From: Podarcis muralis | Taxonomy: Eukaryota | Length of the DNA stretch: 64,000 bases | NCBI RefSeq assembly: GCF_964188315.1 | Contig: NC_135664.1 | Coordinates: 74,896,001-74,960,000, forward strand | Direction: 5' to 3' | Part shown: positions 18,663 through 42,761 of the stretch, in pieces | How positions within the stretch are numbered: position 1 is the first letter of the stretch | Layout: each line of letters begins with the position of its first letter | Notes under the pieces: generated by a model | The model's database searches: none | What the model was told of the DNA's origin: nothing | The model's input: the letters and a program-made list of their open reading frames with translations, nothing else | Position numbers and translations under genes: made by a program

Positions 18663-21600
18663 ATGTTGTGGCTGCTTCTCCCCATTTTGGCTCTTTCCGC
18701 ATTGTGGTCCACGCATGCAGAGGATGAGACATGCACGTAAGTGACCCCAGAATCAGGGAGAGGGTGAGGAGGACCTGTCCGTCCATCACAGCTAGCCCCA
18801 GTGGTGTTCTGGGGCCTCCATGGCAGTCTGCTAGTGAACAAATAAAGCCTTTTCCAGGCGCACAACAGAGAGCCAGTGTGGTGTAGATGTTAGAGGGCTG
18901 CACTATGATCTGGGGGATCAGGGTTCATATACCCCAGGGGTCAGCAAACTTTTTCAGCAGGGGGCCAGTCCACTGTCCCTCAGACCTTGTGGGGGGCCGG
19001 ACTACATTTTTGGGGGGAAAGAAAGAACGAATTCCTAAGCCCCACAAATAACCCAGAGATGCATTTTAAATAAAAGCGCACATTCTACTCATGTAAAAAC
19101 ACGCTAATTCCTGGACCGTCTGCAGGCCGGATTGAGAAGGTGATTGGGCCAGATCCTGCCCCTGGGGCTTAGTTTGCCTACCCATGATTTACCCCCTACT
19201 TGGCCATGGAGCTCACTGGGTCATCTTGGGCCACACACTGTCTCTCAGCCTAACCTACCTCACAGGGTTGTTGTGAGGGAAAGAGCTATATATACACCAT
19301 CTTGAGCCCCTTGGAGAACAGGTGGGAAATAAATGCAAAAACCCTTTTAATCTGCCCTGCTGACCTGACTATTCTCCTGCTGATGATGGATGCTTCCGAT
19401 CTGAGCTGGCTGCTCTCTTGATCTGCTCTTGTTTTTAAAACTATTTCTGTGTTTTGACATTGCATGCATTTGGCTTCATTATTGGATTATTATTATTTTT
19501 TTAAAAAACCAATGTTGTTAGTTACTGCTGTGGCTACCCGAGGGGCAGAGAGACAGGGTGGAAAATTGCTTAAGCATAAATTAGAACGTAGTTATCCTCA
19601 GAATATGCAGTTATTTTAATTGCATTTTCATGCACGAGCATTCAAAATGCATTTACAGTTTTGATATCCCAAAGATGCTTTCTATTTATAACCTCAGTGA
19701 GAAAGCTTTAAATAATTCAGAATCGCATTTCTGTTCCATATAATTAGTAAAAGGACAGCAGAGCCTCTCAGATTGCTCTTGACGGTACCATTTTGCCTAC
19801 ACGGAATGGCAAGATACCATCTTTTTGCTGCAAGACTCGGGGCAGATTAAAGAAAGGACTTCTTCACACAGGGCATAGTTAAACTATGGAACTCCCTGCC
19901 ACAGGAGAGGCAGCAATGGCTTTAAAAGAGGATTAGACAATTTATGGAGGGGAAGAAGGCTATTGATGGCTACTAGCCAGGATGGCAATGTTTCTGAGTC
20001 TTCTTCTTCTTTGGCAATCCCTCGTGGCCAAGTAAGATTGTTTTCCATAAACACAGTTTTAAAAATGAGTCCATAAGTGACGCGGGTGGCGCTGTGGTCT
20101 AAACTTCTCCAAGTCTAACAGGGTCCCTGTCGTGTGGGGCTGCAGTTCTGATGTAGCCAGAGTGGTGTAGTGGTTAGGAGCGGTAGTCTCGTAATCTGGT
20201 GAACCGTGTTCACTTCCCCGCTCCTCCACATGCAGCTGCTGGGTGACCTTAGGCTAGTCACACTTCTCTGAAGTCTCTCAGCCTCACTCACCTCACAGAG
20301 TGTTTGTTGTGGGGGAGGAAGGGAAAGGGGAATGTTAGCCGCTTTGAGACTCCTTCGGGTCGTGATAAAGCGGGATATCAAATCCAAACTCTTCTTCTCT
20401 TCTTCATCCACTGGAATGGAGCTCATGAGCCACGATGCCTACGCAGCCTCACCTGCCTCCTCCCACCTGCACCTACAAACCGTGCCTTCCTTGTCTGTCT
20501 CCCTGATCTGCTCTCTTCTTCACAGGAGGGTGTGCGGAAGCCGCCCGCTGGCTATGAGCCACGGCAACTCGCTGAGGATCGTGGGCGGCTCCAACGTTTT
20601 GCCGGGGACATGGCCGTGGGTCGTCAGCTTCCAGTTCCCGACGAGCCAGGGGCCCAAGCACTTCTGCGCAGGCTCCCTCATCAACGCCCAGTGGGTCCTT
20701 TCCTCCGCTCACTGCTTCATGATCCAAAAGTAAGCAAAGCCAGGTAGACAAATCGGCCCGTTTCGACTTTACTCAGCTTCTCCCCATGCCCACATCAGTC
20801 AGAATGAAAATTCGCAAGCGTTTTCTGTATGAAGGTTCATCTAATGTTCCGATCTATAGGGGTATACTGTATTTTTCGCTCCATAAGACACACTTTTTTC
20901 CTCCTAAAAAGTAAGGGAAAATGTCTGTGCATCTTATGGAGCAAATGTGTGGTTCCTGGAGCCAAATTGCCCAGGGACAAAAAGCAGATTGTGCCCTTTT
21001 TTTTTAGAAAAAGGGAACGGGGGTTTGAAATGAAGCCGCTGAGCAGCTGATCGACAAGTGATTGGAGGGAGATAAGGGACGCTAGCGATAAAGGAGGCTG
21101 CCTGGGAGGAACAGCTGGTAGGTGGCAAAGAGGGAGATCCCTGGCCCCATCGTGCCTTAAATAGGGCAGGCCACGCCCCTGAGCCAGCCGATTGGCTGGC
21201 TAAGGTGATGACGTGGCCGGGAATCCCCCCAATTGCGCAGCGACTGGTTCCAGCCACCGCGCACGTGTCGGGGCCATGATGCCCGCAACCCCACCTCCTC
21301 CGTAGGGCGGAAGTGGCTTTGCCTAGCACCAATCATTCATAAATGACTTGGATGAAGGAATTGAAGGGATGCTAATCAGATTTGCACATGGCACCAAACT
21401 GGGAGGGGCAGCTAATACCACAGAAGATAGAATCAGGATTCAGGATAACTTTAACAAAATGAATTTCAACTGTGCCTTGACAGATGCACAAATATAGAAT
21501 GGGGGAACACAGGGCTTGCCAACAGTATAGGTGGAAAGGTTCTAGGTGTCTTAGTAGACCACAATAGTGTGATGCAGCTGTATCCACAGAAGTCTAGTGT

Positions 21601-22881
21601 TCAGTCCCCACCTGGAAACCTGTGTCCAGTTCTGTGCACCACAGTTTAAGAAGGATGTTGACAAGCTGGCAGGTGTACAGAGGAGGGCAACCAAGATGAT
21701 CAAGGGTCTGGAAACTAAGCCTGATGAGCAACGGTTGAAGGATCTGGGTATGTTTAGCCTGGAGAAGAGGAGACTGAGAAGTGATAGGATAGCCGTATTC
21801 CAATATCTGAAGGACTGCCACGCGGAAAACGGAGCAAGCTTGCTTTCTGCTGCTCTGGAGGACTTGAGTCAATGTTTTCAAATTGGAAGAAAGGAGAGTC
21901 TGACTAAACGTCAGGAAAAAACTTCCTGATGGTAAGAGCTGTTTGACAGCGGAAAAGACTTTCTCAGAAAGTGATGGACTCTCCTTCCTTGAAGGTTTTT
22001 AAGTAGAAGTAAGACGGCCAACAGTCAGGGATACTTTATCTGTGACTCCTGCATTGCAGAAGGCTGTCCAAGATGACCCCCGACGTCCCTTCCAATTCTA
22101 CAATTCTGTGATTCTCTGAAATCTCATTCTATGTCTTCCCTCCCCCCGCCCCCCCAGGTTTGTAAAAGTTGAGTATTTGAAGGTGCACATTGGCGTCACG
22201 CAGCGTTCCAACCCCGGCCCTGATGCCCAGGTCCGCTCCATCAAGAGAATCGTGGACCACGAACACTTCCGCCACGAGGGGTATCTCAACGACATCACCC
22301 TGATTGAGATGGACAAGCCGGTGGTCTGCAACGACTACATCCAGCCTGCCTGTTTGCCGGACGAGAACCTGGAGGTGGATTCCCTGACCCATTGCTACAC
22401 CTGTGGTTGGGGCATCACACAGATAAAGTGTGAGGACCACCCCCTTCCCCTCCCCACAAAGAGACGTGGTTTGCAGGGGCCTCTCGTGGTCCATTCTCCA
22501 TCACCCTGACATCCTCAGGTCTTGAGGTAGGGCTGGGAGTCAGCCAGCCTCTTGCGATCAGGATGCGTCCCTGCTGGGAGTTTCAGAAGCGAAGGCGAGG
22601 AAAGGAAGAGGGATTGAATTGTTGCTTTGGAGACTCTTAAGGACCTTAAGCTGAGCACAGGGATTGGGGGAGGGGGGAATAGCATAACAGAGGGCAGCAC
22701 TTTTGCAGAAATTGGAGGGAGAAGTCCAAGTGTGGGGGACCTGCAGTCCCCCAAATGTTACTGGACTACCATCCCCATCAGCCTTGGGCATTGGTTGGGG
22801 CTGATGAGGTCCAAAAACATCTGGAGGTCCATGCATCCCCCACCCTTGTACTAATCTCTTAGTCAATGGATTATTGCTGTT

Positions 22882-22944
<63 letters not shown>

Positions 22945-25900
22945 TATTTATACCCCGCCCATCTGGCTGGGCTTCCCCAGCCACCCTGGGCGGCTTCCCA
23001 AAAAATATTAAAATACTGTAATACACCAAACATTAAAAGCTTCCCTGAACAGGGCTGCCTTCAGATGTCTTCTAAATGTCAGGTAGTTGTTAATTTATTT
23101 GACATCTGATGGGAGGGCATTCCACACTGCAGGCGCCACCACCGAGAAGGCCCTCTGCCTGGTTCTCTGTAACTTGGCTTCTTGCAGCGAGGAAACCACC
23201 AGAAGGCCCTCAGAGCTGGACCTCAGTGTCCGGGTAGAATGATGGGGGTGGAGGCGCTCCTTCAGGTCTACTGGGCCGAGGTCGTTTAGGGCTTGAAAGG
23301 TCAGCACCAATACATTGAATTGGGCTCAGAGATGTACTGGGAGCCAGTGTAGGTCTTTCAAGACCGGTGTTATGTGGTCTCGGCAGCTGCTCCCAGTCAC
23401 CAGTCTAGCTGCCACATTCTGGATTAGTTGTAGTTTCCGGGTCATCTTCAAAGGTAGCCCCACGTAGAGCGCATTGCAGGAGTCCAAGATAACTAGAGCA
23501 TGCATCACTCTGGCGAGACAGTCTGCAGGCAGATAGGGTCTCAGCCTGCATACCAGATAAAGCTGATAGACAGCTGCCCTGGACAAATGCATGAAGCTGC
23601 CTTGTCTGTTGGCCCAACCAGCCCAGCATCCTCTCTCCTGATATGCAGCAGCTGTGCAGCATCTCTTCCACAGCTGCCTCCCATCACCTGCCACAGCCTT
23701 CTTCCCAAAAAGCTAAGAGTTCTGTCATGGCATCTTTGAAGGGAAGGACCAGAACTCAACTGTTGAGTGAATTCCTTCCCATGCAGAAGAGATCAGATGC
23801 CTGGATTTCTGGTCAAATGCTCAAGCAACTAAACTATAATCCTTTCCCAGCCTGATTTTGGATAGCAGCCCCTTTCTCCCTGGCTATTAGAGTCTGAGAG
23901 ATATTGTGGTCCTGAACCGTTTAAGGCTTTATAGGTGAAAACCAGCACTTTGAGTTGGGCCCAGAAGCTAATTGGCAGCCAGTGAAGTTGGGTCAGCGCT
24001 TATGTTGATATCACAAAGTATCTCTTGGGTAGGTGGAGCAGAGTGACTTTCTCTCATTGAGGAGAGAAACCCTCAGCCCACCTCCTTACACCCAAGATTT
24101 TGGGACCGAGGCTCTCTCCAGGTCAGGCGCTGTCAGTTCTTGATGAGCTTTGCCCAGAAGACCTCTTGCGTTAGAAATTAAGGTCCATCAGGCAGGTACC
24201 AGCTGGGCCTTCTCCCTGCTTTCTGCCCACAGGGCGTGCCCCGTACGCTGACATCATGCAGGAGGCCAGGGTGACCATAATGCCCTCTGACATCTGCAAC
24301 AGCAGCAAGTGGTATGACGGACAGATCATACAGGAGAACATCTGCGTCATATCTGAGGAAGCAAAGGTGGACCGATGTAAGGTAGGTGCGAGGTAAAGCC
24401 CAGCGTCCTCATTCCCCATCATGGTGGTTCTGGTCTTCCGAGCTCCACCCTGGTCTTCTAAACTGAGGTGTCCTGTTACAAGCCAAGACCTGCTGGGGAG
24501 GTCCAGTGGAGGCCAGCAGGAGTGTGAGGAAGAAGCTTGCTGTGGAGCAGAGAGTATTTAGACTACACACTGAGCAAGCAGGATCAGGAGCTAATGGAGG
24601 TCTCAAGTTTGGTGCTCTTGATGGTGCAGGCATCTAAGGAGGAACTTGCAAGCTCAGAGCAGGCTCCCTGCTGCAGAAGCTAAGCCCAGGCATGTAGGAA
24701 ACTGGGAGGAGCCACAACAGGGGGAGGAGCCTAAGGTGTGCCCCCCCCACGCTCCCATTAAAGGGCCTTTGCTCAAATAAAATGTGCAGCGGTCTTTTGG
24801 TGCCTAGGTAGCAGATTCGTTCAGAGTAGGGAGTTGGTTTTGGGCTCCAGTATGGATATAGCAGTTTGCTTCTGGCAAACCAGAGCAGTGCACGGAAACG
24901 CCGTTTACCTTCCCGCTGGAGCGGTACCTATTTATCTACTTGCACTTGGTGCTTTTGAACTGCTAGGTTGAGAGGAGCAGGGACCGAGCAACGGGAACTC
25001 ACCCTGTCGAGGGGATTCGAACCGCCGACCTTCTGATCAGCAAGTCCTAGGCTCTGTGGTTTAACCCACAGCGCCACCCGCGTCCCAGAGATCAGTGTAA
25101 ATGAAAACATGAGTCATGGTTTTGCTATATATGATTTTTCTTTATGAGTTGTCTGTTGTATATTATGTGAGTAATAATAATAAAAGAACCTGCAACCAGG
25201 TGACCCCAGCAAGCAAGGCTTTGGTGGGGGTATCAAGGGGGGTGGGAATGGACACACAGTGTGGCACTTCCTCTCTTTGCCCCTGGTGGCAAAATGAGAC
25301 GGGCCGCCTCTGCCCTCGCTCCTCACGCCGCTTCCCTCTTCCCGCTCCAGGGCGATGGGGGCAGCCCCCTCATGTGCAGGCCAGCGAGATCCGAGCGCTT
25401 CTGGGTTGTGGGCCTCAACAGCTGGGGCAGAGGCTGCACGGTCGGGAAGGTCCCGGGCGTCTTCACCGCCACCCAACACTTCTACTACTGGATCCAGAGA
25501 ATACTGAAGAACCCTCCTGCCTCCGCTCTCGTCCCGCCATTCAAGCCAACACCGCCCCCGACCAAGCCCCCCAGCACCGCCTCCACCCTGTTTTCACCCC
25601 CAGCCTGGGCAACGGCACCCAATTTAAAGAGACCCACTCATATGTTGGTGAACGGCAAGTATTACGGGTACGGGGGCAAGGCCCGGCCAACTTACTCGTT
25701 TGAACGCCCCGGTTATGTTGCAACCACGACCTCCCGGCCTCGTAGCACATGGGGCTGGTACACAGGCCCAAAGAGGACTTTCCCTCCCTATAAGTTCACT
25801 TTCCCCCCCTATAAGCCGACAACTCCCTGGTATCTCACCAGCACAAAGTTCCTGGGCTGGAATGTGCGGCCTAGCATTATTTATAGGCTGCCCAAGCGGA

Positions 25901-26022
25901 AGCCGGCCACCACGGTGAAACCAACGACCCAGTGGCAGTACCAGCCCTGGACCACCATGGCACGACCACAGACCAAGTGGCAGTACACGCGCCGGACCAG
26001 GCCCAGTAACTGGGGCAAATAG
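18663..26022 (+). CDS. Acrosin-like serine protease homolog A (456 aa), predicted catalytically inactive (Ser195->Gly). Exons 18663-18736, 20526-20729, 22158-22429, 24233-24381, 25351-26022
   Basis: Five-exon acrosin layout with phases 2,2,1,0. Signal peptide [19 protein letters not shown], two-Cys light chain (TCTRVCG), R|[30 protein letters not shown]|[12 protein letters not shown] and PGVF. No frameshift or premature stop. Confidence 0.9.
18868..19330 (+). mobile_element. Squam3-like tRNA-derived SINE interrupted by a hAT MITE (18935-19186)
   Basis: gagagccagtgtggtgtag head and cctaacctacctcacagggttgttgtgagg body. The MITE has CAGGGGTCAGCAAAC ends and an 8-bp TSD at(a/t)taccc. Other SINE copies at 10208-10345, 20155-20400 and 38722-38800. 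Confidence 0.75.
21325..22115 (+). mobile_element. CR1 LINE 3' fragment in intron 2 of gene A
   Basis: [34 protein letters not shown]...LEKRRLR with an attctgtgattct tail. Confidence 0.9.
22945..23640 (-). mobile_element. L2-clade LINE fragment with a long (AAT)n tail
   Basis: [10 protein letters not shown]...[26 protein letters not shown]...[12 protein letters not shown]. Confidence 0.9.
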
Positions 26023-32848: not shown

Positions 32849-35800
32849 GTCGTTTAGTCATGTCCGACTCTTCGTGACCCCCTGGACCAGAGCACGCCAG
32901 GCCCTCCTGTCTTCCACTGCCTCCCGCAGTTTGGTCAAACTCATACTGGTAACTTCGAGAACACTGTCCCACCATCTCGTCCTCTGTCGTCCCCTTCTCC
33001 TTGTGCCCTCCATCTTTCCCAACATCAGGGTCTTTTCCAGGGAGTCTTCTATTCTCATGAGGTGGCCAAAGTCTTGGAGCCTCAGCTTCAGGATCTGTCC
33101 TTCCAGTGAGCACTCGGGGCTGATTTCCTTCAGAATGGAGAGGTCTGATCTTCTTGTGGTCCATGGGACTCTCAAGAGTCTCCTGCAGCGCCATAATTCA
33201 AAAGCATCAATTCTTCGGCGATCAACACTAAGCTTCTTCATTTAGTGCCTAGTTAAACAATGGAACTCTCTCCCACAGGAGGCAGAGATGACCACCAACT
33301 TGGGTGGCTTTCAACTTCATGGAAGAGAGGTCTATTCATGGCTATTAGGAAGGCTCTGCTCTGTCTCCAATGCTGGAGGAAGCAATGCTTCTGAATACTA
33401 GTTGCTGGGAACTGCAGGCGTGGAGAGGGCTCCATGTGCCTGGGTCCTGCTTTCTGGATCCCCTTTGGGGTATCCTGTCCACTGTGAGGACAGGATGATG
33501 GACTAGATGGCCTGAGCCAGCAGGCTCTCTTTGTTTCGTTATGGAAAGGAGGACCCTTTTCTTCAGATCTCCACACTGAGTATCCCATGGGACAAACGTT
33601 AGAGAGGTGATCTCAAGTCAGTAGACGTGGCCATAGCTGCAGAATTATTGTTGTGTGTGTGTGTGTTCAGGGCAACAGAAGGATGTCCTGTGAAGGGAAA
33701 AGACACTCGTGTAGATAATAATAATAATAATAATAATTTATTTATATCCCACCCTCCCCAGCCGAAGCCGGGCTCAGAGCAGCTAACAACAGTAAAGTAA
33801 TACAGTATTCTAAAATCAATTCATTCTAAAATCAGTTCAAATCAAATCAATGGCAACCGTTGGGCTAGAGCTCTGTGAGGATCACCAAAGGAGGGGGTCA
33901 GGCTGTGCCTTGGCCAAAGGCCTGGTGGAACAGCTCTGTCTTGCAGGCAGAAAGATGTCAAGTCCCGCAGGGACTCTTGGGACAGAGCGTTCCACCAGAT
34001 CGGGGCCACGGCCGAAAAAGCCCTGGTTCTGGTTGAGGCCAGCCTAACCTCTCTGTGGCCTGGGACCTCCAAGATGTTTTAGTTTGAAGACCGTAAGTTT
34101 CTCTGTGGGACATACCAGGAGAGGCGGTCCCATAGGTACGAGGGTCCTAGGCCGTATAGGGCTTTAAAGGTTAAAACCAGCACCTTAAACCTGATCCTGT
34201 ACTCCACCAGGAGCCAGTGCAGCTGGTACAGCACCGGGTGAATGTGATACCGCAGTGAGGACCCCATAAAGAGTCTCGCCGCGGCATTCTGCACCCGCTG
34301 GAGTTTCTGGGTCAGTCTCAAGGGCAGCCCCACGTAGAGTACATCCCCACTTTGAGGATGGATGTAGATGGGTGAGCAGCAACAAAGTTTAAGACCTGCA
34401 TGGACCCAAAGGTTCATAGATAAAGGAAGAACAGTGACTAAGGATGGTAGGGAGCAATTTAGGCAGGAACATGGGCCATGCCATTTTCTGCAGTGAAAAC
34501 ATTAGCTGGCACCAGGCAAGATGTTTATTGCATTTACGCATCTTTGATCCAATGAGCTCTAGGGTAGTGCACATGGTTCCCCATCCCGGTCCTCATTTAA
34601 TCCCCACAACAGCCTTGTAGGTTAGGCTGAGTGAGTGTCTGACCCCCAAGGTCACCACCACCAGTGAGCTTCATGGCTGAGAGGGCTAAGACCCTCCCTG
34701 CCCGCGGACTGTCTTGCCAGAGTGGTGCATGCTCGAGTTATCTCTCACTTGGACTACTGCAATGTGCTCTATGTGGGGCTACCTTTGAAGGTGACCCGGA
34801 AACTGCAATTAATCCAGAAAGCGGCAGCTAGACTGGTGACTGGGAGCGGCCACCAGGACCACATAACACCGGTCCTGAGAGATCTGCATTGGCTCCCAGG
34901 ACGTTTCCAAGCACAATTCAAAGTGTTTCTGCTGACCTTGAAAGCCCTAAATGCCCTCGGCCCAGTATACCTGAAGGTGCGTTTCCACCCCCACCATCCA
35001 GCCCAGACACTGAGGTCCAGCTCCAAGGGTTCCCTCATTGCAAGAAGTGAGGTTGCAGGGAACCAGACAGAGGGCCTTCTCAGTAGTGGCGCCCGCCCTG
35101 TGGAACGCCCTCCCTTCAGATGTGAAGGAAATAAGCAGCTATCCTATCTTTAAAAGACATCTGAAGGCAGCCCTGTTCAGGGAAGTTTTTAATATTTAAT
35201 GCTGTATTGTTTTTAACACTCGGTTGGGAGCTGCCCAGAGCGGCTGGGGAAACTCAGCCAGATGGTTGGGGTATAAATAAAAAATTATTATTATTATTAT
35301 TTGAACCCTGCTCTTGCCCCAGTCTGATGCTCTAAGCATTGCACCACACTGCCTCTCGACGTGCAGAACGGACCACTGGGAGCGAGGAAGCACTGACGAC
35401 CTCCTCTCTTTCCAGAGTCTGCGGAAGGCGCCCCTTGGTGCCAGGCCATGGTGGCGGCACAGGGCGGACTACGGGTGGGGCCGACGCCCTGCCGGGGGCC
35501 TGGCCCTGGATCGTCAGCTTGCAGCTGCCAACATTGACGGGGCACAAGCACACCTGCGGAGGCGCCCTCATCACTGCCCGGTGGGTCCTCACAGCCGCCC
35601 ACTGCTTTGGAAGCAAAAAGTAAGCAGGAGCCAAAGTGGTTGGGGGTGGATGAGGCGAAGGAAGATGCCCCCCTGACTGGCCATATGCCCTGACCACTGG
35701 GAGCCGGGCCATGTAGGGGGCAATGGGGCAAAGAGGGGGGCGGGTCCCTAAGTATAAGGAACAAAAAACACAAAGCCACAGGTGATACAATAGAAATACA

Positions 35801-38800
35801 GTGATACCTTGGTTCTTGAACGTAATCCATTCTGGAAGACTGTTTGGCTTCTGAAACGTTTGAAAACAGAGGTGCGGCTTCCCATTGGTTGCAAGAGCTC
35901 CTTGCACTCAGCGGAAGCGACATCGCACATTCGGGTTCCGTAAAATGTTCAAAAACAGAAGCATTTACTTCTGGGTTTTCGGTGTTCGGCTTCCGAAACA
36001 TTCGATAATGGATGCTTTCGGGAACTGAGGTACCACTGTATATATAATCGTATATGTAATTGTGACTTCTGAAACGAAGGTTGGACTAGGATGACCTTAC
36101 ACTACAATTCTACGATTCTATGATTAATCAGTATAAAGGTAAAGGTAAAGGTACCCCTGCCCATACAGGCCAGTCATGTCCGACTCTAGGGTTGTGCGCC
36201 CATCTCACTTAAGAGGCCGGGGGGCCAGCGCTGTCCGAAGACACTTCCGGATCACGTGGCCAGCGTGACAAGCTGCATCTGGAGAGCCAGCGCAGCACAC
36301 GGAAACGCCGTTTACCTTCCCGCTAGTAAGCGGTCCCTATTTATCTACTTGCACCCAGGGGTGCTTTCGAACTGCTAGGTTGGCAGGCGCTGGGACCGAG
36401 CAACGGGAGCGCACCCCGCCGCGGGGATTCGAACCGCCAACCTGACGATCGGCAAGTCCTAGAATCATAGAATCATAGAATCATAGAGTTGGAAGAGACC
36501 ACAAGGGCCATCGAGTCCAACCCCCTGCCAAGTAGGAAACACCATCAGAGCACTCCTGACATATGGCTGTCAAGCCTCTGCTTAAAGACTTCCAAAGAAG
36601 GAGACTCCACCACACTCTTACTGTCAGGAAGTTCTTCCTAATGTTTAGGTGGAATCTTCTTTCTTGTAGTTTGGATCCATTGCTCCGTGTCCGCTTCTCT
36701 GGAGCAGCAGAAAACAACCTTTCTCCCTCCTCTATGTGACATCCTTTTCTATATTTGAACATGGCTATCATATCACCCCTTAACCTCCTCTTCTCCAGGT
36801 TTTACCCACAGCGCCACCCGCGTCTCTGATTAATCAGTATACCTGCATACAATTTAGTATTACAAAATATCCAAACTGTGTCCACTGAATATAAAACAAA
36901 TAAGTTCTCCATGCCTAAAAGTCTGATTACAAAGGAATGCCTTTCTGCCTGGTGCCTGAATATATGTAATGATGGTGCCAGGCGAGCCTCCCTGGGGAGT
37001 GCATTGCACAAAAGGGGAGCCACCACTGAAAAGGCCCTATTCTCCTGTTGCCGCCCTCTGGACCTCCCGGGTCCAGGTCAGTTCATATGGGGAGAGGCAG
37101 TTCTTGGGGTACTGGAGTCCTGAGCTGTGCTCGGCTTCACAGCCTCTTCTGCTCTCCAGGAGCCTTCCGCACTGGCGCGCAGTGATCGGTGCTTCAAAGC
37201 TCTCTGTCCTCGGCTCGGAGGTCCACGTGCGCTACATCAAGCAAGTGGTGGTGCACGAAGCCTACCAGGCGACCACGCAGGTCAATGACGTGGCGCTGAT
37301 GGAGCTGGACCAGCCCATCATCTGCAGCGACTACATCCAGCCGGCCTGCATGCCCGACAGCACCGTCAGCGTGGCCGCTCTGTCTTTCTGCTACATCAGT
37401 GGCTGGGGACTCAGCAAAGCGAAAGGTGAGAGCCTGGCCGAGGCGGCCTCCCTGGCGCACCCTGGCACCCGAGTAGACAAAGGAGGTGGGGAAAGACAGC
37501 TGTGAGGGTCCTCCGGGGACCTTGGCTGGCCCCCTTTTACAGCAGGGATAAGGAACTGTTTGAGGTTGGGAGCCGTAAGCTCTTCTGGGCAACTTTCCAC
37601 GTTTTATTGTAATTTATATTCTGTGTTAGCTGCCCTGAGCCCGGCCCTGGCTGGGGAGGGCGGGGTATAAATAAAAATTCACAATTATGATGATGATGAT
37701 TATATCTGATTGCCTCTGTTCAACACCCCCAAAGTGGCAGTCCCGGCGATGTTGCTCCTTAAGGATCCTGGGGTGTGGTGGGGGCACTTCCTTTCCTCCG
37801 TGGGACTTCGGTTGTAGCTGAAGTTCCAGCATCAAGCTGTCTAGGAACAGGTGGGGGGGGGGGACACACGCACCACGGACTAAAGAGTTGCTCTTCCCCT
37901 GCCAACAGGGGTGGAGGCATCAGACATGATGCAGGAGGCAAAGGTCAATCGCTTTTCCACCCAGACGTGCAACAGCAGCAGCTGGTACAACGGGACCGTA
38001 AGAGAGAACAGCCTCTGCGCAGGGTACGAACAAGGAGGCACCGACAGCTGCCAGGTAAGGTGCCAAGATCCTTGGCAGCTTCAGATATGTGGAACTGGGT
38101 GTCAGATTCGAGGATGCAGGAAACAGCCTTGTTCTGAGGATACAGGGGCCCAGCTCCTTTGGCTCACATCATCATTTGGGGTCATCAGCCCAGAGGCGTA
38201 GTGTTGGGGGGTGTGGCCCCGTGTGCACATTTCTGAGGGGGCACCCCCACGACAGGGTGGCCACAGCTGTGGGGAGGCAAGCCAAGCTGCACCCAGGCTG
38301 GGTCCTCGGGCGCTGGGATGGTGTCTCCCCTTGGCTGGAGCATGCCCTGCCCATGGGCCAACCGAGAGGGGGGGAGGGAGGGAGGGAGGGAGGGAGGGAG
38401 GGAGAAGGGGCTGCCGCCCCCCTCCAGGAGAGGTGAGAGGCACCACCTGGATGGGGAGGGAGAGGCAAGGAGGAGAAGGGCAGCCGTGTTCTCTGGGGCT
38501 CCAGTACAGTGTGGCAGTAGGCAGGTTGGTCCAGTGGGCAGGTGGATGGAGGCAGAGGGCGAGGAGTCTGTTGAAAGCGGGCTTCGTTCACCCTCAGCAC
38601 GGGCCCCGCACGCCCCCAGCGCATGCCCCCCAGCTGACCAGGCAGGGCAGCCCACACCTAGCCACTGCATCACACACACCCCATCTTGTGTGAAAGTGGC
38701 CAAGCACAAGTGGTAAGATCAGAGCCAGTGGTGGTGTAATGGTCAGAGTGTCAGACTAGGACACAGGAGACCAGGGTTTGAATCTTCAGTCAGCCATGGA

Positions 38801-41800
38801 AAATATACCTGTGCCCTATGTTTCTATTTAGTGACCACTCCTCTGTTGCAATACTTAAAGGGTTTGGGGAGCCCCCAATACACTTCAGTTTGCCCTTTAA
38901 AAAAGCCACACTTACTTTGGCCACAGGCAGGCTGAGATGCGGCCTCCAGAGAGCTGAGCATGGGCCAATGTGGCTCTCGCTTGCCACCCACCGCCAACAC
39001 CCTTGACTCAGCCATGGGAGACAGTCAGCATCTCTTCGCCCCGTGCAGCCCTTCAGCTGCCCAGCGCTTCTAGAAACCCCGCAACGCCCCAGTGGACACC
39101 CCTTTCTTCCCTCCTTTTGAGACAAATGCAATCGGTTGCTCACCCCCAACTTCTTTTGCATGTCTTGTCGCTGCAGGGAGACAGTGGGAGCCCCCTCATG
39201 TGCAAGGAAGAGGCATCTGAGCCGTTTTGGGTGATTGGAGTCACCAGCTGGGGCCAAGGCTGTGGCAAAGCACACCGCCCGGGAGTCTACGCCGCCACAC
39301 AGCCCTTGTATGCCTGGGTGAAAGGGTGGGCAGGACCCATGCCCCAGCCCCCACCCACCCCAGAGCCTGCCCCTTCGGCACCCCGGAAGCTGAAGACACC
39401 TCACGTCACTATCTATTTCCATCCTCCGACAAACCCTTTCCATTGGTCTGAGACCAGCAGCAAGCCCACAGCCTCATCGCAGCCGAAGCCACAAGAGGAG
39501 ACCACATCCACAAGCACATCTCAACCCACGCCCGAAACCAAGCCTGAAACTACATCCCAGCCCACGTCTGAAACCACATCCCAACCCACGTCTGAAACCA
39601 AGCCTGAAACCCCATCTCACCCCAAACCCACACCAGAAACCAAGCCTGAAACCACAACTCAACCCAAACCCACACCAGAAACCAAGCCTGAAACCACAAC
39701 TCAACCCGAAACCAAGCCCGAAACCAAGCCTGAAACCACAACTCACCCCAAACCCACACCAGAAACCAAGCCTGAAACCACATCTCAACCCAAACCCACA
39801 CCAGAAACCAAGCCTGAAACCACAACTCACCCCAAACCCACACCAGAAACCAAGCCTGAAACCACAACTCACCCCAAACCCACACCAGAAACCAAGCCTG
39901 AAACCACATCTCAACCCAAACCCAAACCCAGAACTCCAACCAAGCCCACAATCACAATTCATTTCAGGCCTGCAACTCAAACCAAGCCTGAAACCCCATC
40001 TCATCCCAAACCCACGTCAACACCTCCAACCAAGCCCACCATCACAATTCTGTTGAGGCCTGCAACCCCAACTCAAACCAAGCCTGAAACCCAATCTCAA
40101 CCCAAACCTACGCCGACACCTCCAACCAAGCCCACCATCACAATTCATTTGAGGCCTGCAACCCCACCCAAACTAAGACCCCCACTTCCACCGCAGGCAA
40201 AGCCAGAACACATACCTCAACCTGAGCCAGAGACCCCTCCTCTGCCAATGCCCAAAGTCCCACCTCAGGCTAAGATACCAACCACACCTGAACCAAATAT
40301 CACAGCCTCACCTCAAAGGAAGCCAGAAACCACAACTCAACCAAAGATCACACCTCCAACAGACCCAGAAATCATACCTCAGCCAAAGCCCACATCCCCT
40401 CCTCAAACAGATCCAGATGGCATACCTGCATCTCAGCCACCTCCCAACCCCCCAACTCCACCTCAAGCTGAGAACAGCACTACGCCGGAAGTGAAGCCCC
40501 CGTCCCTACCTCAAACTGTGTCCAACACCTCACTTGAACCCAATAATGAAACACAACCTGAGATGGAGCTAGATGTATCACCTGAGCATGAGCATGAACA
40601 TGAGCACAAGCCTGGAGGACCAAATGTGTATGAGCATGAACATGAACATGAGCATGAGCATGAGCATGAACATGAGCATGAGCATGAGCATGAACATGAG
40701 CATGAACATGAGCATGAACATGGGACAGGAGAGCCTTATGCATATGAGTACGAGCATGAGTATGAGGCTGGAGGGCCACCTGAGCATGAAACCCCACTGG
40801 AACCCACGACGGAAGCGCCATCGGAACCTGTGACAGAAGCCCCATCAACACCCACAACAGAAGCGACATCGAAACCCACAACAAAAGTCCCATCAAAACC
40901 TACAACCGAAGCTCCATCAACACCCACAGATGCCCCATCAAAACCTACAACCGAAGCTCCATCAACACCCACAGAAGTCCCATCAAAACCCACAACTGAA
41001 GCTCCATCAAAACCCACAACCGAAGCTCCATCAACACCCACAACTGAAGCTCCATCAACACCCACAGAAGCCCCATCAAAACCCACAACCGAAGCTCCAT
41101 CAACACCCACTGAAGCCCCATCAAAACCCACAACTGAAGCTCCATCAACACTCACAGAAGTCCCAGCAAAACCCACAACTGAAGCTCCATCAAAACCCAC
41201 AACCGAAGCCCCATCAAAACCCACAACTGAAGCTCCATCAACAGCCACAGAAGCCCCATCAAAGCCCACAACTGAAGCTCCATCAACAGCCACTGAAGCC
41301 CCATCAAAACCCACAACCGAAGCTCCATCAACAGCCACAGAAGCCCCATCAAAGCCCACAACTGAAGCTCCATCAACACTCACAGAAGTCCCAGCAAAAC
41401 CCACAACCGAAGCTCCATCAACACCCACAACAGAAGCCCCATCAACACCCACAGAAGTCCCATCAAAACCCACAACCGAAGCTCCATCAGCAACCACAGT
41501 AGCCCCATCAAAACTCACAACCGAAGCTCCATCAACAACCACAGAAGCCCCATCAAAACCCACGATGGAAGCCCCATCAACACCCACAGAAGTCCCATCG
41601 AAACCCACAACCGAAGCTCCATCAACACCCACAGAAGTCCCAACAAAACCCACAACCGAAGCTCCATCAACACCCACAGAAGTCCCATCGAAACCCACAA
41701 CCGAAGCTCCATCAACACCCACAGAAGTCCCAACAAAACCCACAACTGAAGCCCCATCAACACCCACAGAAGTCCCATCGAAACCCACAACCGAAGCTCC

Positions 41801-42761
41801 ATCAACACCCACAGAAGTCCCAACAAAACCCACAACTGAAGCCCCATCAACACCCACAGAAGTCCCATCGAAACCCACAACCGAAGCTCCATCAACACCC
41901 ACAGAAGTCCCAACAAAACCCACAACTGAAGCCCCATCAACACCCACAGAAGTCCCATCGAAACCCACAACCGAAGCTCCATCAACACCCACAGAAGTCC
42001 CAACAAAACCCACAACTGAAGCCCCATCAACACCCACAGAAGTCCCATCGAAACCCACAACCGAAGCTCCATCAACACCCACAGAAGTCCCAACAAAACC
42101 CACAACCGAAGCTCCATCAACACCCACAGGAGTCCCATCGAAACCCACGATGGAAGCCCCATCAACACCCACAGAAGTCCCAACAAAACCCACGACCGAA
42201 GCTCCATCAACACCCACAGGAGTCCCATCGAAACCCACGATGGAAGCCCCATCAACACCCACAGAAGTCCCAACAAAACCCACGACCGAAGCTCCATCAA
42301 CACCCACAGGAGTCCCATCAAAACCCACGATGGAAGCCCCATCAACACCCACAGAAGTCCCAACAAAACCCACGACCGAAGCCCCATCAACACCCGCAGA
42401 AGTCCCATCAAAACCCACAACCCAAGCTCCATCAACACCCACAGAAGCCCCATCAAAACCCACAACGGAAGCCCCACCAGAACCCGCTACGAAAGCCCCA
42501 GAACCTCAGCCCAAGCCAGAAACTCCAGCTGCCCCCAAGCCCCAGAAAAATACCAATACCACAGTGGCCTCTTTCTTCAGACTGCTTCAGAAATTCTTGC
42601 ATGCTGCCAGGGAGGAGAAGTTGACTGAGCTGGAACTCAAGAAAAAAGGTGCAGATTCTCTCCCGGATTCAGGAGCGGAGAAAAGGAATCCTTGCGCGCA
42701 GGCGAAGAACTCCAAAGCGCCCCTGGCACGTGAGTGCCTCACCAAAGTCAGTAGGTCTTAG
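32689..42761 (+). CDS. ACR: Acrosin-like serine protease B (1424 aa) with intact triad, TTGG activation site and giant mucin-like tail. Exons 32689-32762, 35416-35619, 37160-37425, 37909-38054, 39177-42761
   Basis: Signal peptide [19 protein letters not shown], light chain [32 protein letters not shown]|GDSGSPLMC. Phases 2,2,1,0; exons 1 and 2 are the same length as in paralog A (74 and 204 nt). It sits convergent to RABL2, as human ACR does. The ACR symbol rests on similarity and synteny; which paralog is the true ortholog is unresolved. Confidence 0.88.
32814..33226 (-). mobile_element. Bov-B LINE 3' fragment, 50 nt into intron 1 of gene B
   Basis: [18 protein letters not shown]...GVTKSRT with a (CAA)n tail. 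Confidence 0.9.
33735..34345 (-). mobile_element. Second L2-clade subfamily fragment
   Basis: [23 protein letters not shown]...[17 protein letters not shown]. Same family as 60735-61440. Confidence 0.85.
34685..35280 (+). mobile_element. L2-clade LINE 3' fragment
   Basis: [25 protein letters not shown]. Confidence 0.9.
36136..36826 (-). mobile_element. Sauria SINE interrupted by a CR1 3' fragment (~36462-36799)
   Basis: 15-bp TSD tgattaatcagtata at 36121 and 36827. A CR1 (catagaat)n tail lies inside the SINE head. Confidence 0.9.
39500..40160 (+). repeat. Coding tandem repeat, 39-bp/13-aa unit (PETKPETT[S/T][Q/H]PKPT), followed by degenerate PTKPTITI units
   Basis: Repeated cacaccagaaaccaagcctgaaaccaca... 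units in frame in the terminal exon of gene B. Confidence 0.9.
40584..40790 (+). repeat. Coding (GAG/GAA-CAT)n repeat: (EH)4 plus (EH)15 plus degenerate YEYEHEYE
   Basis: 40584-40607 encodes 4 EH pairs; 40632-40721 is 90 nt and encodes 15 EH pairs. Confidence 0.95.
40800..42480 (+). repeat. Coding minisatellite TEAPS[T/K]PT / TEVP[S/T]KPT (21-24 bp subunits, 45-bp and 90-bp higher-order units)
   Basis: Sequence lines 41701 and 41881 are identical, as are 41761 and 41941. The array stays in frame throughout. Confidence 0.95.

What the first reader, a model, noticed from the sequence alone, without database searches (positions are those of the whole stretch)
25351..25380. Acrosin-like A is a pseudoprotease (Ser195->Gly) with a preserved trypsin-type S1 pocket
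SEEN: exon 5 starts GGC GAT GGG GGC AGC CCC (GDGGSP), against GDSGSP in B. GGG differs from AGT/AGC by two bases, so a single miscall is unlikely. His57 (SAHC), Asp102 (NDIT), Asp189 (VDRCK), Gly216, Gly226, the disulfide cysteines and R|IVGG are all kept, whereas CAGY has become CVIS. INFERENCE: A can be activated and bind Arg/Lys ligands or inhibitors but not cleave them, as an adhesin, inhibitor decoy or cofactor.
Basis: partly seen in the sequence, partly recalled or inferred. Interest (0 to 1): 0.75.

Follow-up and report, generated by a model that had tools for sequence, protein, structure and literature searches.

The report
Ancient dead acrosin copy in lizards
This wall-lizard gene is a copy of the sperm protease acrosin that lost its cutting serine before living lizards and snakes diverged, yet selection has kept it intact in all 17 species examined, so it most likely works by binding rather than cutting.

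Summary
Exon 5 of acrosin-like gene A (Podarcis muralis, XP_028603578.1) starts GGC GAT GGG GGC AGC CCC, which reads GDGGSP. The neighbouring gene B reads GDSGSP.

It is not an error or a decaying gene:
- The gene has five GT-AG exons and an intact 456-aa frame with a hydrophobic, signal-like N-terminus.
- The GGG codon is identical in four other lacertid genomes.
- A run from a second, coded species (organism B) holds a spliced transcript contig that joins exons 4 and 5 at the annotated sites.
- Gly195 occurs in all 17 members of a well-supported clade that includes geckos, so the loss predates crown Squamata.
- omega is 0.20 for the protease domain and 0.33 for the tail, and omega = 1 is strongly rejected.

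Later, snakes also lost His57 and Asp102, colubroid snakes lost Asp189, and Elgaria lost His57. This argues that catalysis really was given up.

Asp189, Gly216 and Gly226 are kept in lizards, but Arg190, Asn213 and Phe228 are unusual. Ser197 is not conserved, so it is not a substitute nucleophile.

The conserved features are the disulfide framework, the R|IVGG site with Asp194, and a very basic Pro/aromatic-rich tail (pI about 11). I read it as a cleavage-switched binding protein. The partner is untested.

This is a new member of the known S1 pseudoprotease kind. I found no paper describing it.

The parts
18663..18736 (+). Gene A exon 1: ATG, hydrophobic signal-like N-terminus ([19 protein letters not shown]), start of light chain
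   Evidence: Spliced exons translate exactly to P0001 / XP_028603578.1; GT donor. Signal-peptide reading is by inspection; no predictor was run.
20526..20729 (+). Gene A exon 2: light chain, activation site R|IVGG (20575-20589), His57 (20710-20712)
   Evidence: AG/GT sites; Pfam Trypsin E 3e-13; codons verified
22158..22429 (+). Gene A exon 3: Asp102 (22291-22293), Cys122, Cys136 and the extra Cys139 (CYTC, 22393-22404)
   Evidence: Pfam Trypsin E 1e-12
24233..24381 (+). Gene A exon 4: CVIS (in place of CAGY), Asp189 (24370-24372), Arg190, Cys191, Lys192
   Evidence: The exon 4 to exon 5 joint, GT..AG, is seen in a transcript contig of run X16.
25351..26022 (+). Gene A exon 5: GDGGSP (Gly195 codon GGG at 25357-25359), rest of the protease domain, basic Pro/aromatic-rich tail from about 25510, stop TAG 26020-26022
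   Evidence: Pfam Trypsin E 3e-7
25357..25359 (+). Codon GGG = Gly at chymotrypsin position 195, the nucleophile position
   Evidence: HMMER alignment to ram beta-acrosin 1FIW puts it opposite the Ser of GDSGGP. Gly in 17 of 17 clade members.
35416..42761 (+). Gene B, the tandem neighbour used for comparison: exons 35416-35619, 37160-37425, 37909-38054 and 39177 to about 42761. It has GDSGSP, R|TTGG and a PT-rich tail of about 1150 aa.
   Evidence: In the tree it groups with Elgaria, Pogona and Anolis acrosins, next to bird and amphibian acrosins.

Best explanation
Gene A encodes a non-catalytic acrosin paralogue. It is an S1 (trypsin-fold) pseudoprotease that arose by duplication in the squamate acrosin family. 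It lost the Ser195 nucleophile (Ser to Gly) before the geckos split from other squamates, and selection has kept it since.

Shown here:
- an intact five-exon gene with a hydrophobic signal-like N-terminus;
- a spliced transcript in a second, coded species (organism B);
- Gly195 fixed across the clade;
- strong purifying selection on both the domain and the tail;
- later loss of His57, Asp102 and Asp189 in some lineages.

Inferred: the protein is made as a zymogen-like precursor. It is still cut at the conserved R|IVGG site, so the new Ile16 N-terminus can pair with the conserved Asp194 and order the former active-site region. It then acts by binding rather than cleaving.

My leading guess for the partner, at about 35%, is polyanionic or sulfated glycans or glycoproteins of the egg coat. 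Binding would involve the protease-like domain together with the conserved, extremely basic tail (pI about 11, Pro- and aromatic-rich). This would be a dedicated version of the non-enzymatic zona-binding activity known for mammalian proacrosin.
For: Gene integrity: the exons splice with GT-AG sites to exactly XP_028603578.1.

Expression: run X16 (organism B) has a 1451-nt contig at depth 44.5, against 2-4 in the introns. It joins exon 4 to exon 5 at 24381/25351. Its remaining 575 nt match the summed length of exons 1-3 plus a short 5'UTR (the length match is my inference).

Conservation: GDGG[SG]P occurs in Podarcis (3 species), Lacerta, Zootoca, Rhineura, Salvator, Pogona, Anolis, Hemicordylus, Elgaria, Varanus, five snakes and Eublepharis. 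Gekko japonicus has GAGGGP.

Phylogeny: these sequences form one clade, with UFBoot/SH-aLRT 99/93 and SH-aLRT 99 in the quick tree.

Age: the Gly195 codon varies synonymously (GGG, GGC, GGT), as expected for an old fixed Gly.

Selection: omega is 0.198 for the domain (2dlnL = 470 against omega = 1) and 0.331 for the tail (2dlnL = 86.5). P. muralis against P. raffonei gives dN = 0 and dS = 0.087 in the domain.

Catalysis abandoned: His57 became R, K, Q or A in snakes and F in Elgaria. Asp102 became Asn in all snakes. Asp189 became G or V in colubroids.

What is kept: all 12 framework Cys; R15|I16 in 14 of 16 readable sequences; Asp194 in 16 of 17; tails of pI 10.5-11.6 in all 10 species measured.

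Precedent: proacrosin binds zona sulfated glycans non-enzymatically (review PMC7827414). S1 pseudoproteases such as PRSS37 are needed for mouse sperm function (PMC9114714).
Against: - No tissue is known for the expressing run. One P. muralis RNA-seq run (X23) and one probable RNA run (X18) gave no exon coverage.
- Testis or acrosome localisation is assumed from the family name only.
- No biochemical test of inactivity or of any binding was possible here.
- The newer RefSeq model, XP_028603578.2, is N-terminally truncated and starts in exon 4. This may mean weak RNA support for exons 1-3 in P. muralis.
- Anolis sagrei and Gekko japonicus lack the R|I site, so activation cleavage is not universal.
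- The AlphaFold model is only moderate (domain pLDDT 70-90, tail about 30) and gives no geometry.
Confidence: 0.78

Rival explanations
1. Regulator of the live acrosins rather than an adhesin. The dead domain would act as a decoy that soaks up Kazal- or serpin-type inhibitors, or as a cofactor or partner of an active paralogue such as the neighbouring gene B. The basic tail of A would pair with the acidic mucin-like tail of B.
For: - Squamates carry at least five acrosin-like paralogue clades, so active partners are present.
- A and B are tandem neighbours.
- In Elgaria the A-type and B-type genes have consecutive RefSeq accessions on the same record.
- A's tail has pI 11, while the Elgaria B-type tail has pI 4.6.
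- His57 and Asp102 are retained in most lizards long after Ser195 was lost. This fits canonical inhibitor docking.
- From my own knowledge, arthropod Ser-to-Gly serine-protease homologues act as cleavage-activated cofactors.
Against: - Snakes lost His57, Asp102 and Asp189 yet keep the gene under constraint. A canonical inhibitor or substrate-like docking site is therefore not required across the family.
- B's odd activation site (R|TTGG) is not conserved in its clade: Elgaria has R|IVGG, and Pogona and Anolis differ again. The 'complementary lesions' are therefore not an old paired system.
- No interaction data exist.
Confidence: 0.2
2. The protein is still a protease and uses an unconventional nucleophile, for example Ser197 or a water-based mechanism.
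For: His57, Asp102, Ser214, Gly193 and Asp194 are all present in the lacertid protein, and Ser197 lies two residues from position 195.
Against: - Ser197 is Gly in 10 of 17 clade members and is also present in gene B, which has Ser195. It is therefore not a compensating change.
- His57 and Asp102 were lost in snakes, and His57 in Elgaria, without loss of the gene.
- No position other than 195 and 213 distinguishes the clade from other acrosin-like domains.
Confidence: 0.03
3. A is a young or decaying pseudogene that evolves neutrally.
For: A catalytic residue is missing. The RefSeq model was shortened in its second version. Two P. muralis RNA runs gave no exon coverage.
Against: - Open frames and GT-AG splice sites are intact in 11 species for which the CDS was rebuilt from genomic DNA.
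- omega is 0.20, and omega = 1 is rejected with 2dlnL = 470.
- A spliced transcript is present in a second, coded species, organism B.
Confidence: 0.02
4. The Gly codon is a sequencing or assembly error, or a private allele of the reference animal.
For: None found. The read table was truncated, so the read-level check alone is not airtight.
Against: - The same GGG codon is present in three independent lacertid genome assemblies, and Gly is present in 17 species.
- No difference is listed at 25351-25380 in an independent P. muralis DNA run.
Confidence: 0.01

Closest known systems
Mammalian (pro)acrosin (ACR; ram and boar beta-acrosin, PDB 1FIW and 1FIZ)
   Same: - Best solved-structure matches by sequence, E 1.6e-55 and 3.6e-52.
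- Same five-exon layout, with GDxG at the start of exon 5.
- Light chain with two Cys.
- Same 12 framework cysteines.
- R|IVGG activation site.
- Pro-rich C-terminal extension.
- Proacrosin also has a non-enzymatic egg-coat binding activity (PMC7827414).
   Different: - Ser195 is Gly, so no covalent catalysis is expected.
- The tail is much more basic and aromatic-rich, and it is itself conserved (omega 0.33).
- There is an extra, 13th cysteine (Cys139).
- In the tree A lies in a squamate-only paralogue clade, whereas neighbour B's clade sits next to bird and amphibian acrosins.
PRSS37 (mouse sperm S1 pseudoprotease)
   Same: A catalytically inactive trypsin-family protein in male reproduction that is nevertheless essential for sperm function (PMC9114714). 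It is a precedent for a dead S1 protease kept for sperm biology.
   Different: It is not an acrosin paralogue and is mammalian. PRSS37 is reported to support ADAM3 maturation and sperm migration; no such partner is known in squamates. No sequence comparison with PRSS37 was run here.
Arthropod serine protease homologues with Ser195 to Gly (for example Drosophila masquerade, prophenoloxidase-activating cofactors)
   Same: From my own knowledge: the same Ser-to-Gly change at the nucleophile, and retention of a zymogen-type cleavage site that must be cut for the protein to function as an adhesive or cofactor molecule.
   Different: These belong to an unrelated lineage of the S1 family, carry clip domains and act in immunity or development. 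The resemblance is in mechanism only and was not tested here.
Vertebrate S1 pseudoproteases: HGF/MSP, haptoglobin, azurocidin (CAP37), protein Z
   Same: From my own knowledge: trypsin-fold domains with a substituted triad (azurocidin also has Gly at 195) that act by binding. In HGF/MSP, cleavage at the activation site switches on binding.
   Different: They have different domain architectures and act in plasma or as growth factors. None is an acrosin relative.

Membership tests
Peptidase family S1 (chymotrypsin/trypsin fold, Pfam PF00089) | Sequence match to the Trypsin domain model over the whole domain | tested here: met
   Exons 2, 3 and 5 hit PF00089 at E 3e-13, 1e-12 and 3e-7, covering profile positions 1-44, 50-128 and 178-220. 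Exon 4 hits weakly, at E 0.0095, below the cutoff on its own. Full-length PDB hits are all S1 proteases.
Peptidase family S1 (chymotrypsin/trypsin fold, Pfam PF00089) | Conserved disulfide framework (C42-C58, C136-C201, C168-C182, C191-C220, plus the light-chain links) | tested here: met
   All these cysteines are present in A and in essentially all clade members. P0001 has 13 Cys in total.
Peptidase family S1 (chymotrypsin/trypsin fold, Pfam PF00089) | Catalytic triad His57-Asp102-Ser195 | tested here: not met
   His57 and Asp102 are present but position 195 is Gly (GGG, 25357-25359). A is therefore a non-peptidase homologue of the family, not an active member.
Acrosin (ACR) proper | Orthology with ACR of other tetrapods | tested here: inconclusive
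   In the ML tree the clade of neighbour B (with Elgaria, Pogona and Anolis) is sister to bird and amphibian acrosins (100/96). A sits in a squamate-only clade (99/93). The tree is midpoint-rooted, and tuatara, turtle, crocodile and mammal sequences were not identified among the rows.
Acrosin (ACR) proper | Acrosin-type architecture: signal peptide, disulfide-linked light chain, R|IVGG, protease domain, Pro-rich C-terminal extension, five exons | tested here: met
   The closest solved structures are ram and boar beta-acrosin.
Acrosin (ACR) proper | Expression in spermatids and storage in the acrosome | not testable with these tools
   Only a spliced transcript contig in a coded run of unknown tissue from a second, coded species, organism B.
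S1 pseudoproteases (serine protease homologues) | S1 fold with a substituted catalytic residue, maintained by purifying selection | tested here: met
   Gly195 in 17 of 17 clade members. omega is 0.198 for the domain, and omega = 1 is rejected with 2dlnL = 470.
S1 pseudoproteases (serine protease homologues) | Demonstrated lack of peptidase activity, with a non-catalytic function | not testable with these tools
   Needs recombinant protein. Indirect support: later loss of His57, Asp102 and Asp189 in snakes and anguimorphs without loss of the gene.

The most novel reading that the evidence does not exclude
All squamates carry a 'pseudo-acrosin' about 200 million years old. It would be the sperm's dedicated egg-coat (or polyanion) adhesin. 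A zymogen-type cleavage at R|IVGG would switch its binding on, and its conserved ultra-basic aromatic tail would strengthen it. In effect, the adhesive and proteolytic jobs of ancestral acrosin were divided between paralogues.
Probability: 0.25. Interest if true: 0.7.

Novelty: new member of a known kind. Interest (0 to 1): 0.5.

Why it matters
Acrosin is the textbook sperm protease, yet its role has been disputed since knockout mice proved fertile. Its non-enzymatic egg-coat binding has been hard to separate from its proteolysis.

Squamates appear to have run that experiment naturally. One acrosin paralogue gave up catalysis roughly 200 million years ago (dating from my own knowledge of the Gekkota split). 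It then lost the rest of the triad piecemeal in snakes and in Elgaria, yet the fold, the activation site and a peculiar basic tail remain under purifying selection.

This gives a clean handle on what an acrosin scaffold does when it cannot cut. It also flags that database entries named 'acrosin-like' in reptiles mix live and dead enzymes across at least five paralogue clades. A 2026 survey reported the triad intact in all 10 ACR sequences it examined (PMC13762310) and, as far as I read it, does not mention these paralogues.

On the other hand, dead members are common in protease families, so the kind of thing found here is not new.

Tried and rejected
- **RNA evidence in P. muralis.** The raw RNA-seq run X23 (12% of reads sampled) and the probable RNA run X18 gave no coverage of exons 4-5 apart from one 245-nt contig at depth 2.2. 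Tissue is unknown, so this says little.
- **Literature.** Searches on acrosin with squamates, lizard, snake, Anolis or pseudoprotease found no paper on a dead squamate acrosin. The library lacks most subscription journals.
- **Structure.** The AlphaFold2 model from a 20-sequence alignment had mean pLDDT 57 (domain 70-90, tail about 30, loops around residues 33-52, 227-234 and 259-264 below 50). No coordinates are exposed, so the Ser197-His57 distance could not be measured. I did not run a fold search, because sequence already places the protein next to beta-acrosin.
- **Ser197 as substitute nucleophile.** Rejected on conservation grounds.
- **Gekko kuhli P0038 (GDGGGP).** First taken for the gecko orthologue, but the tree puts it in another paralogue clade. 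The true gecko members are Eublepharis P0121 and Gekko japonicus P0107.
- **Elgaria.** The exon 1/2 junction could not be resolved (3 residues unaccounted for), so its CDS was used from residue 28.
- **Exon 1 in Lacerta and Rhineura.** The signal-like first exon was not found within the fetched loci; the flanks were too short.
- **Clade-defining residues.** A scan for further residues that define the clade gave only S195G and T213N.
Full report
**1. The observation**

Window 25351-25380 reads GGC GAT GGG GGC AGC CCC CTC ATG TGC AGG, which is [10 protein letters not shown]. It follows a polypyrimidine tract and an AG acceptor. On the same strand, 14 kb downstream, a second trypsin-like gene (B) reads GGA GAC AGT GGG AGC CCC, which is GDSGSP, at 39177-39194.

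- R|IVGG at 20575-20589
- His57 at 20710-20712
- Asp102 at 22291-22293
- Asp189 at 24370-24372, inside VDRCK
- CVIS where acrosins have CAGY
- Ser214-Trp215-Gly216, Gly226 and the framework cysteines

A HMMER alignment to ram beta-acrosin (1FIW) places the Gly exactly opposite the Ser of CQGDSGGPLMC.

**2. The gene and the organism**

A protein search with the exon-5 frame returned 'acrosin-like [Podarcis muralis]', XP_028603578.1, 456 aa, at 100% identity. Five window exons carry canonical GT-AG sites and translate exactly to that protein: 18663-18736, 20526-20729, 22158-22429, 24233-24381 and 25351-26022.

The product has these parts:
- a hydrophobic signal-like N-terminus (judged by inspection; no predictor was run)
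- a light chain with two cysteines
- the protease domain
- a 169-aa tail

Pfam's Trypsin model matches exons 2, 3 and 5, and matches exon 4 weakly. A newer RefSeq version, XP_028603578.2, is a shortened model of 265 aa that starts at a Met in exon 4. The Lacerta agilis model lacks the signal-like first exon. I take these as gene-model weaknesses. They may also reflect thin RNA support for the 5' exons.

**3. Error, allele or real?**

- *Independent DNA.* A P. muralis DNA run from another study (X15) has a contig across 25064-26300 with no difference listed at the codon.
- *Transcript.* A small run of a second species (X16, organism B, coded) has a 1451-nt contig at depth 44.5. Intron depth is 2-4. 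The contig skips 24381 to 25351 with GT..AG ends, which is exactly intron 4. It also extends 575 nt past exon 4, and this equals exons 3 + 2 + 1 (550 nt) plus 25 nt. The length match is my inference, because the contig's letters were not shown.
- *Caveat.* The difference table was truncated, and in X16 the codon lies 9 nt from the joint, where differences may go unlisted.
- *Stronger check.* CDS rebuilt from the genomic loci of P. raffonei, Lacerta agilis and Zootoca vivipara all carry GGG at this codon. The P. lilfordi protein has GDGGSP.

An error or a private allele is excluded for practical purposes. The gene is transcribed and correctly spliced in at least one relative.

**4. How old and how widespread**

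Two word-indexed searches and one exhaustive HMMER search recovered about 90 acrosin-like protease domains. Names came from cluster look-ups.

In maximum-likelihood trees, A falls in a clade of 17 sequences. Support is UFBoot/SH-aLRT 99/93 in the careful tree and SH-aLRT 99 in the quick tree. The clade contains:
- lacertids, Rhineura and Salvator
- Pogona and Anolis sagrei
- Hemicordylus
- Elgaria and Varanus
- five snakes
- as the sister branch, the geckos Eublepharis macularius and Gekko japonicus

Every one of the 17 has Gly at position 195. Among the 74 other acrosin-like domains the column is 95% Ser. S195G and T213N are the only positions that define the clade. The Gly codon itself varies synonymously: GGG in lacertoids, Anolis and Elgaria; GGC in colubrid snakes; GGT in Eublepharis and Hemicordylus.

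The simplest reading is a single Ser-to-Gly change on the stem, before crown Squamata diversified. From my own knowledge that is roughly 200 million years ago. I could not tell whether tuatara or other reptiles have the gene.

**5. Selection**

I rebuilt the CDS of 11 clade members from genomic DNA and aligned them by codon.
- A single-ratio GY+F3X4 model gives omega = 0.198 for the light chain plus protease domain. Fixing omega at 1 costs 2dlnL = 470.
- For the tail, omega = 0.331 and the cost is 2dlnL = 86.5.
- Pairwise Nei-Gojobori ratios in the domain run from 0 to 0.46. P. muralis against P. raffonei gives dN 0 and dS 0.087.

This is a constrained gene, not a neutral relic.

**6. What was kept and what was lost**

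Kept:
- all 12 framework cysteines
- Gly193, Ser214 (16 of 17), Trp215
- Asp194 (16 of 17)
- the R15|I16 cleavage site (14 of 16 readable sequences; lost in Anolis sagrei and Gekko japonicus)

Lost after Ser195:
- His57 in all five snakes (R, K, Q, Q, A) and in Elgaria (F). The Varanus model shows Y, but that model is poor.
- Asp102, which is Asn in all five snakes.
- Asp189, which is G or V in the four colubroid snakes.

This stepwise decay of the remaining catalytic residues, in lineages that still keep the gene open and constrained, is the best indirect evidence that catalysis was abandoned. It also argues against any cryptic mechanism. Ser197 is Gly in 10 of 17 members and is present in the Ser195-bearing gene B as well, so it is not a replacement nucleophile.

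**7. The S1 pocket**

Lacertids do keep Asp189, Gly216 and Gly226. But residue 190, which lines the pocket in this fold (established knowledge), is Arg in lacertids, Rhineura, Salvator, Pogona and Anolis. Residue 213 is Asn in most clade members and residue 228 is Phe in all 17, where the four non-clade sequences compared have Thr and Tyr.

An Arg at 190 could pair with Asp189 and occupy the pocket. That is inference, not shown. Since colubroid snakes dispense with Asp189, Arg/Lys recognition cannot be the family's conserved function.

**8. The tail and an odd cysteine**

The tail of A (residues 288-456) has pI 11.0, with 27 Lys+Arg against 1 Asp+Glu, 31 Pro and 28 Trp+Tyr+Phe. In all ten clade members measured, the tail pI is 10.5-11.6 with similar composition. 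Blocks such as [14 protein letters not shown], [14 protein letters not shown] and [15 protein letters not shown] are shared from lacertids to Rhineura and, more loosely, to snakes.

The AlphaFold model predicts the tail to be disordered (pLDDT about 30), while the domain reaches 70-90.

A has 13 cysteines. The extra one, Cys139 in CYTCGWG, is present in 13 of 17 clade members and is not seen in the four non-clade acrosin-like sequences compared. A free thiol or an intermolecular disulfide is possible.

**9. Mechanism**

*Shown:* a secreted-type, selection-maintained, trypsin-fold protein without a nucleophile.

*Inferred:* the cleavage site and its partner Asp194 are conserved in a protein that cannot cut. 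The zymogen-to-'enzyme' conformational switch is therefore probably still used, now to turn on a binding surface. From my own knowledge, HGF/MSP and arthropod Ser-to-Gly protease homologues work this way.

*Partner:*
- Mammalian proacrosin binds sulfated zona glycans non-enzymatically (PMC7827414), and the tail is polycationic. My leading guess is therefore egg-coat or polyanion adhesion, at about 35%.
- An inhibitor-decoy or cofactor role for the live paralogues is the main rival, at about 20%.
- Most lizards retained His57 and Asp102 long after Ser195 was lost. This hints at a ligand that contacts the old active site. Their loss in snakes shows this is not universal.

**10.

An earlier first-stage note (s1-152555) proposed that A and B form a two-component system with complementary lesions and oppositely charged tails. 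Three things bear on it.
- The charge contrast is real: A's tail has pI 11, and the Elgaria B-type tail has pI 4.6.
- A-type and B-type genes are probably neighbours in Elgaria too, since their accessions are consecutive on one record.
- B's R|TTGG is not conserved in its clade: Elgaria has R|IVGG, and Pogona and Anolis differ again.

The 'complementary lesions' are therefore not an ancient pairing. In the tree, B's clade sits next to bird and amphibian acrosins (100/96), so B looks like the ACR-proper lineage and A like a squamate paralogue. This depends on the root.

**11. Comparison with what is known**

The closest solved relatives are ram and boar beta-acrosin. A fails the defining triad test for an active S1 peptidase, so it should be filed as a non-peptidase homologue. 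It meets the tests for an S1 pseudoprotease that I could run: a substituted triad and purifying selection.

PRSS37, a dead S1 protease required for mouse sperm function, is the nearest functional precedent (PMC9114714). A 2026 comparative study of ACR and TMPRSS12 reports the triad intact in all 10 ACR sequences it examined and does not discuss squamate paralogues (PMC13762310). My searches found no description of this clade, within the limits of an open-access library.

**12. Verdict**

It is not a lacertid curiosity but a pan-squamate, ancient, constrained dead acrosin.

The kind of thing is well known: a pseudoenzyme inside a protease family expansion, and in reproduction. I therefore class it as a new member of a known kind, with moderate interest (0.5). 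Its function is open and directly testable.

Noticed in passing
window 35465-35479; proteins P0101, P0097, P0128: Gene B has R|TTGG at its activation site. In B's own clade the site is unstable: Elgaria has R|IVGG, Pogona has ...QLEGSVD, and Anolis carolinensis has ...PRRGGFD. Ser195 is kept in all of them.
   Followed up: partly
window 39336-42761: Exon 5 of gene B runs on as a single open frame of about 1150 aa. It is made of PT-rich repeats with a Glu-His tract, a mucin-like tail. The other two frames are also open over long stretches, because of the repeats.
   Followed up: no
proteins P0038 (Gekko kuhli), P0117 (Geotrypetes seraphini), P0035 (Hemicordylus), P0036 (Zootoca): Position 195 was lost independently in other acrosin-like paralogues outside A's clade: Gly in a Gekko kuhli paralogue and in a caecilian acrosin-like protein, Ala in Hemicordylus, and Arg in Zootoca.
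   Followed up: partly
window 22393-22404 (CYTC); P0001 Cys175: There is an extra, 13th cysteine at chymotrypsin position 139. It is present in 13 of 17 clade members and is not seen in the four non-clade acrosin-like sequences compared. It may be a free thiol or an intermolecular disulfide.
   Followed up: partly
window 24847-25154 (intron 4 of gene A): A tRNA-derived SINE-like repeat attracts very large read depth in every run, RNA runs included, with many internal joints and loose ends. It is unrelated to the gene's expression.
   Followed up: no
window about 22870-22960 (intron 3 of gene A): A trinucleotide microsatellite that translates as poly-Ile or poly-Asn runs. I kept it out of the stretch given to read laying.
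   Followed up: no
P0065 (XP_028603578.2), P0064 (Lacerta agilis), P0013 (Hemicordylus), L010: Annotation problems in the family. The second RefSeq version of A is truncated to 265 aa. The Lacerta model reads through intron sequence in place of the signal-like first exon. The 709-aa Hemicordylus protein fuses two adjacent genes, a Ser195 type followed by the Gly195 type.
   Followed up: partly
L009 931-3315 and 22531-22719 (Eublepharis macularius): The gecko A-type gene is flanked on both sides by further acrosin-like exons, so the tandem array is also present in Gekkota.
   Followed up: no
proteins P0070, P0071, P0072, P0073 and others: The exhaustive search is headed by very long proteins with up to 14 trypsin domains. 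Several of those domains have Thr or Gly at position 195. Their organisms are unknown.
   Followed up: no
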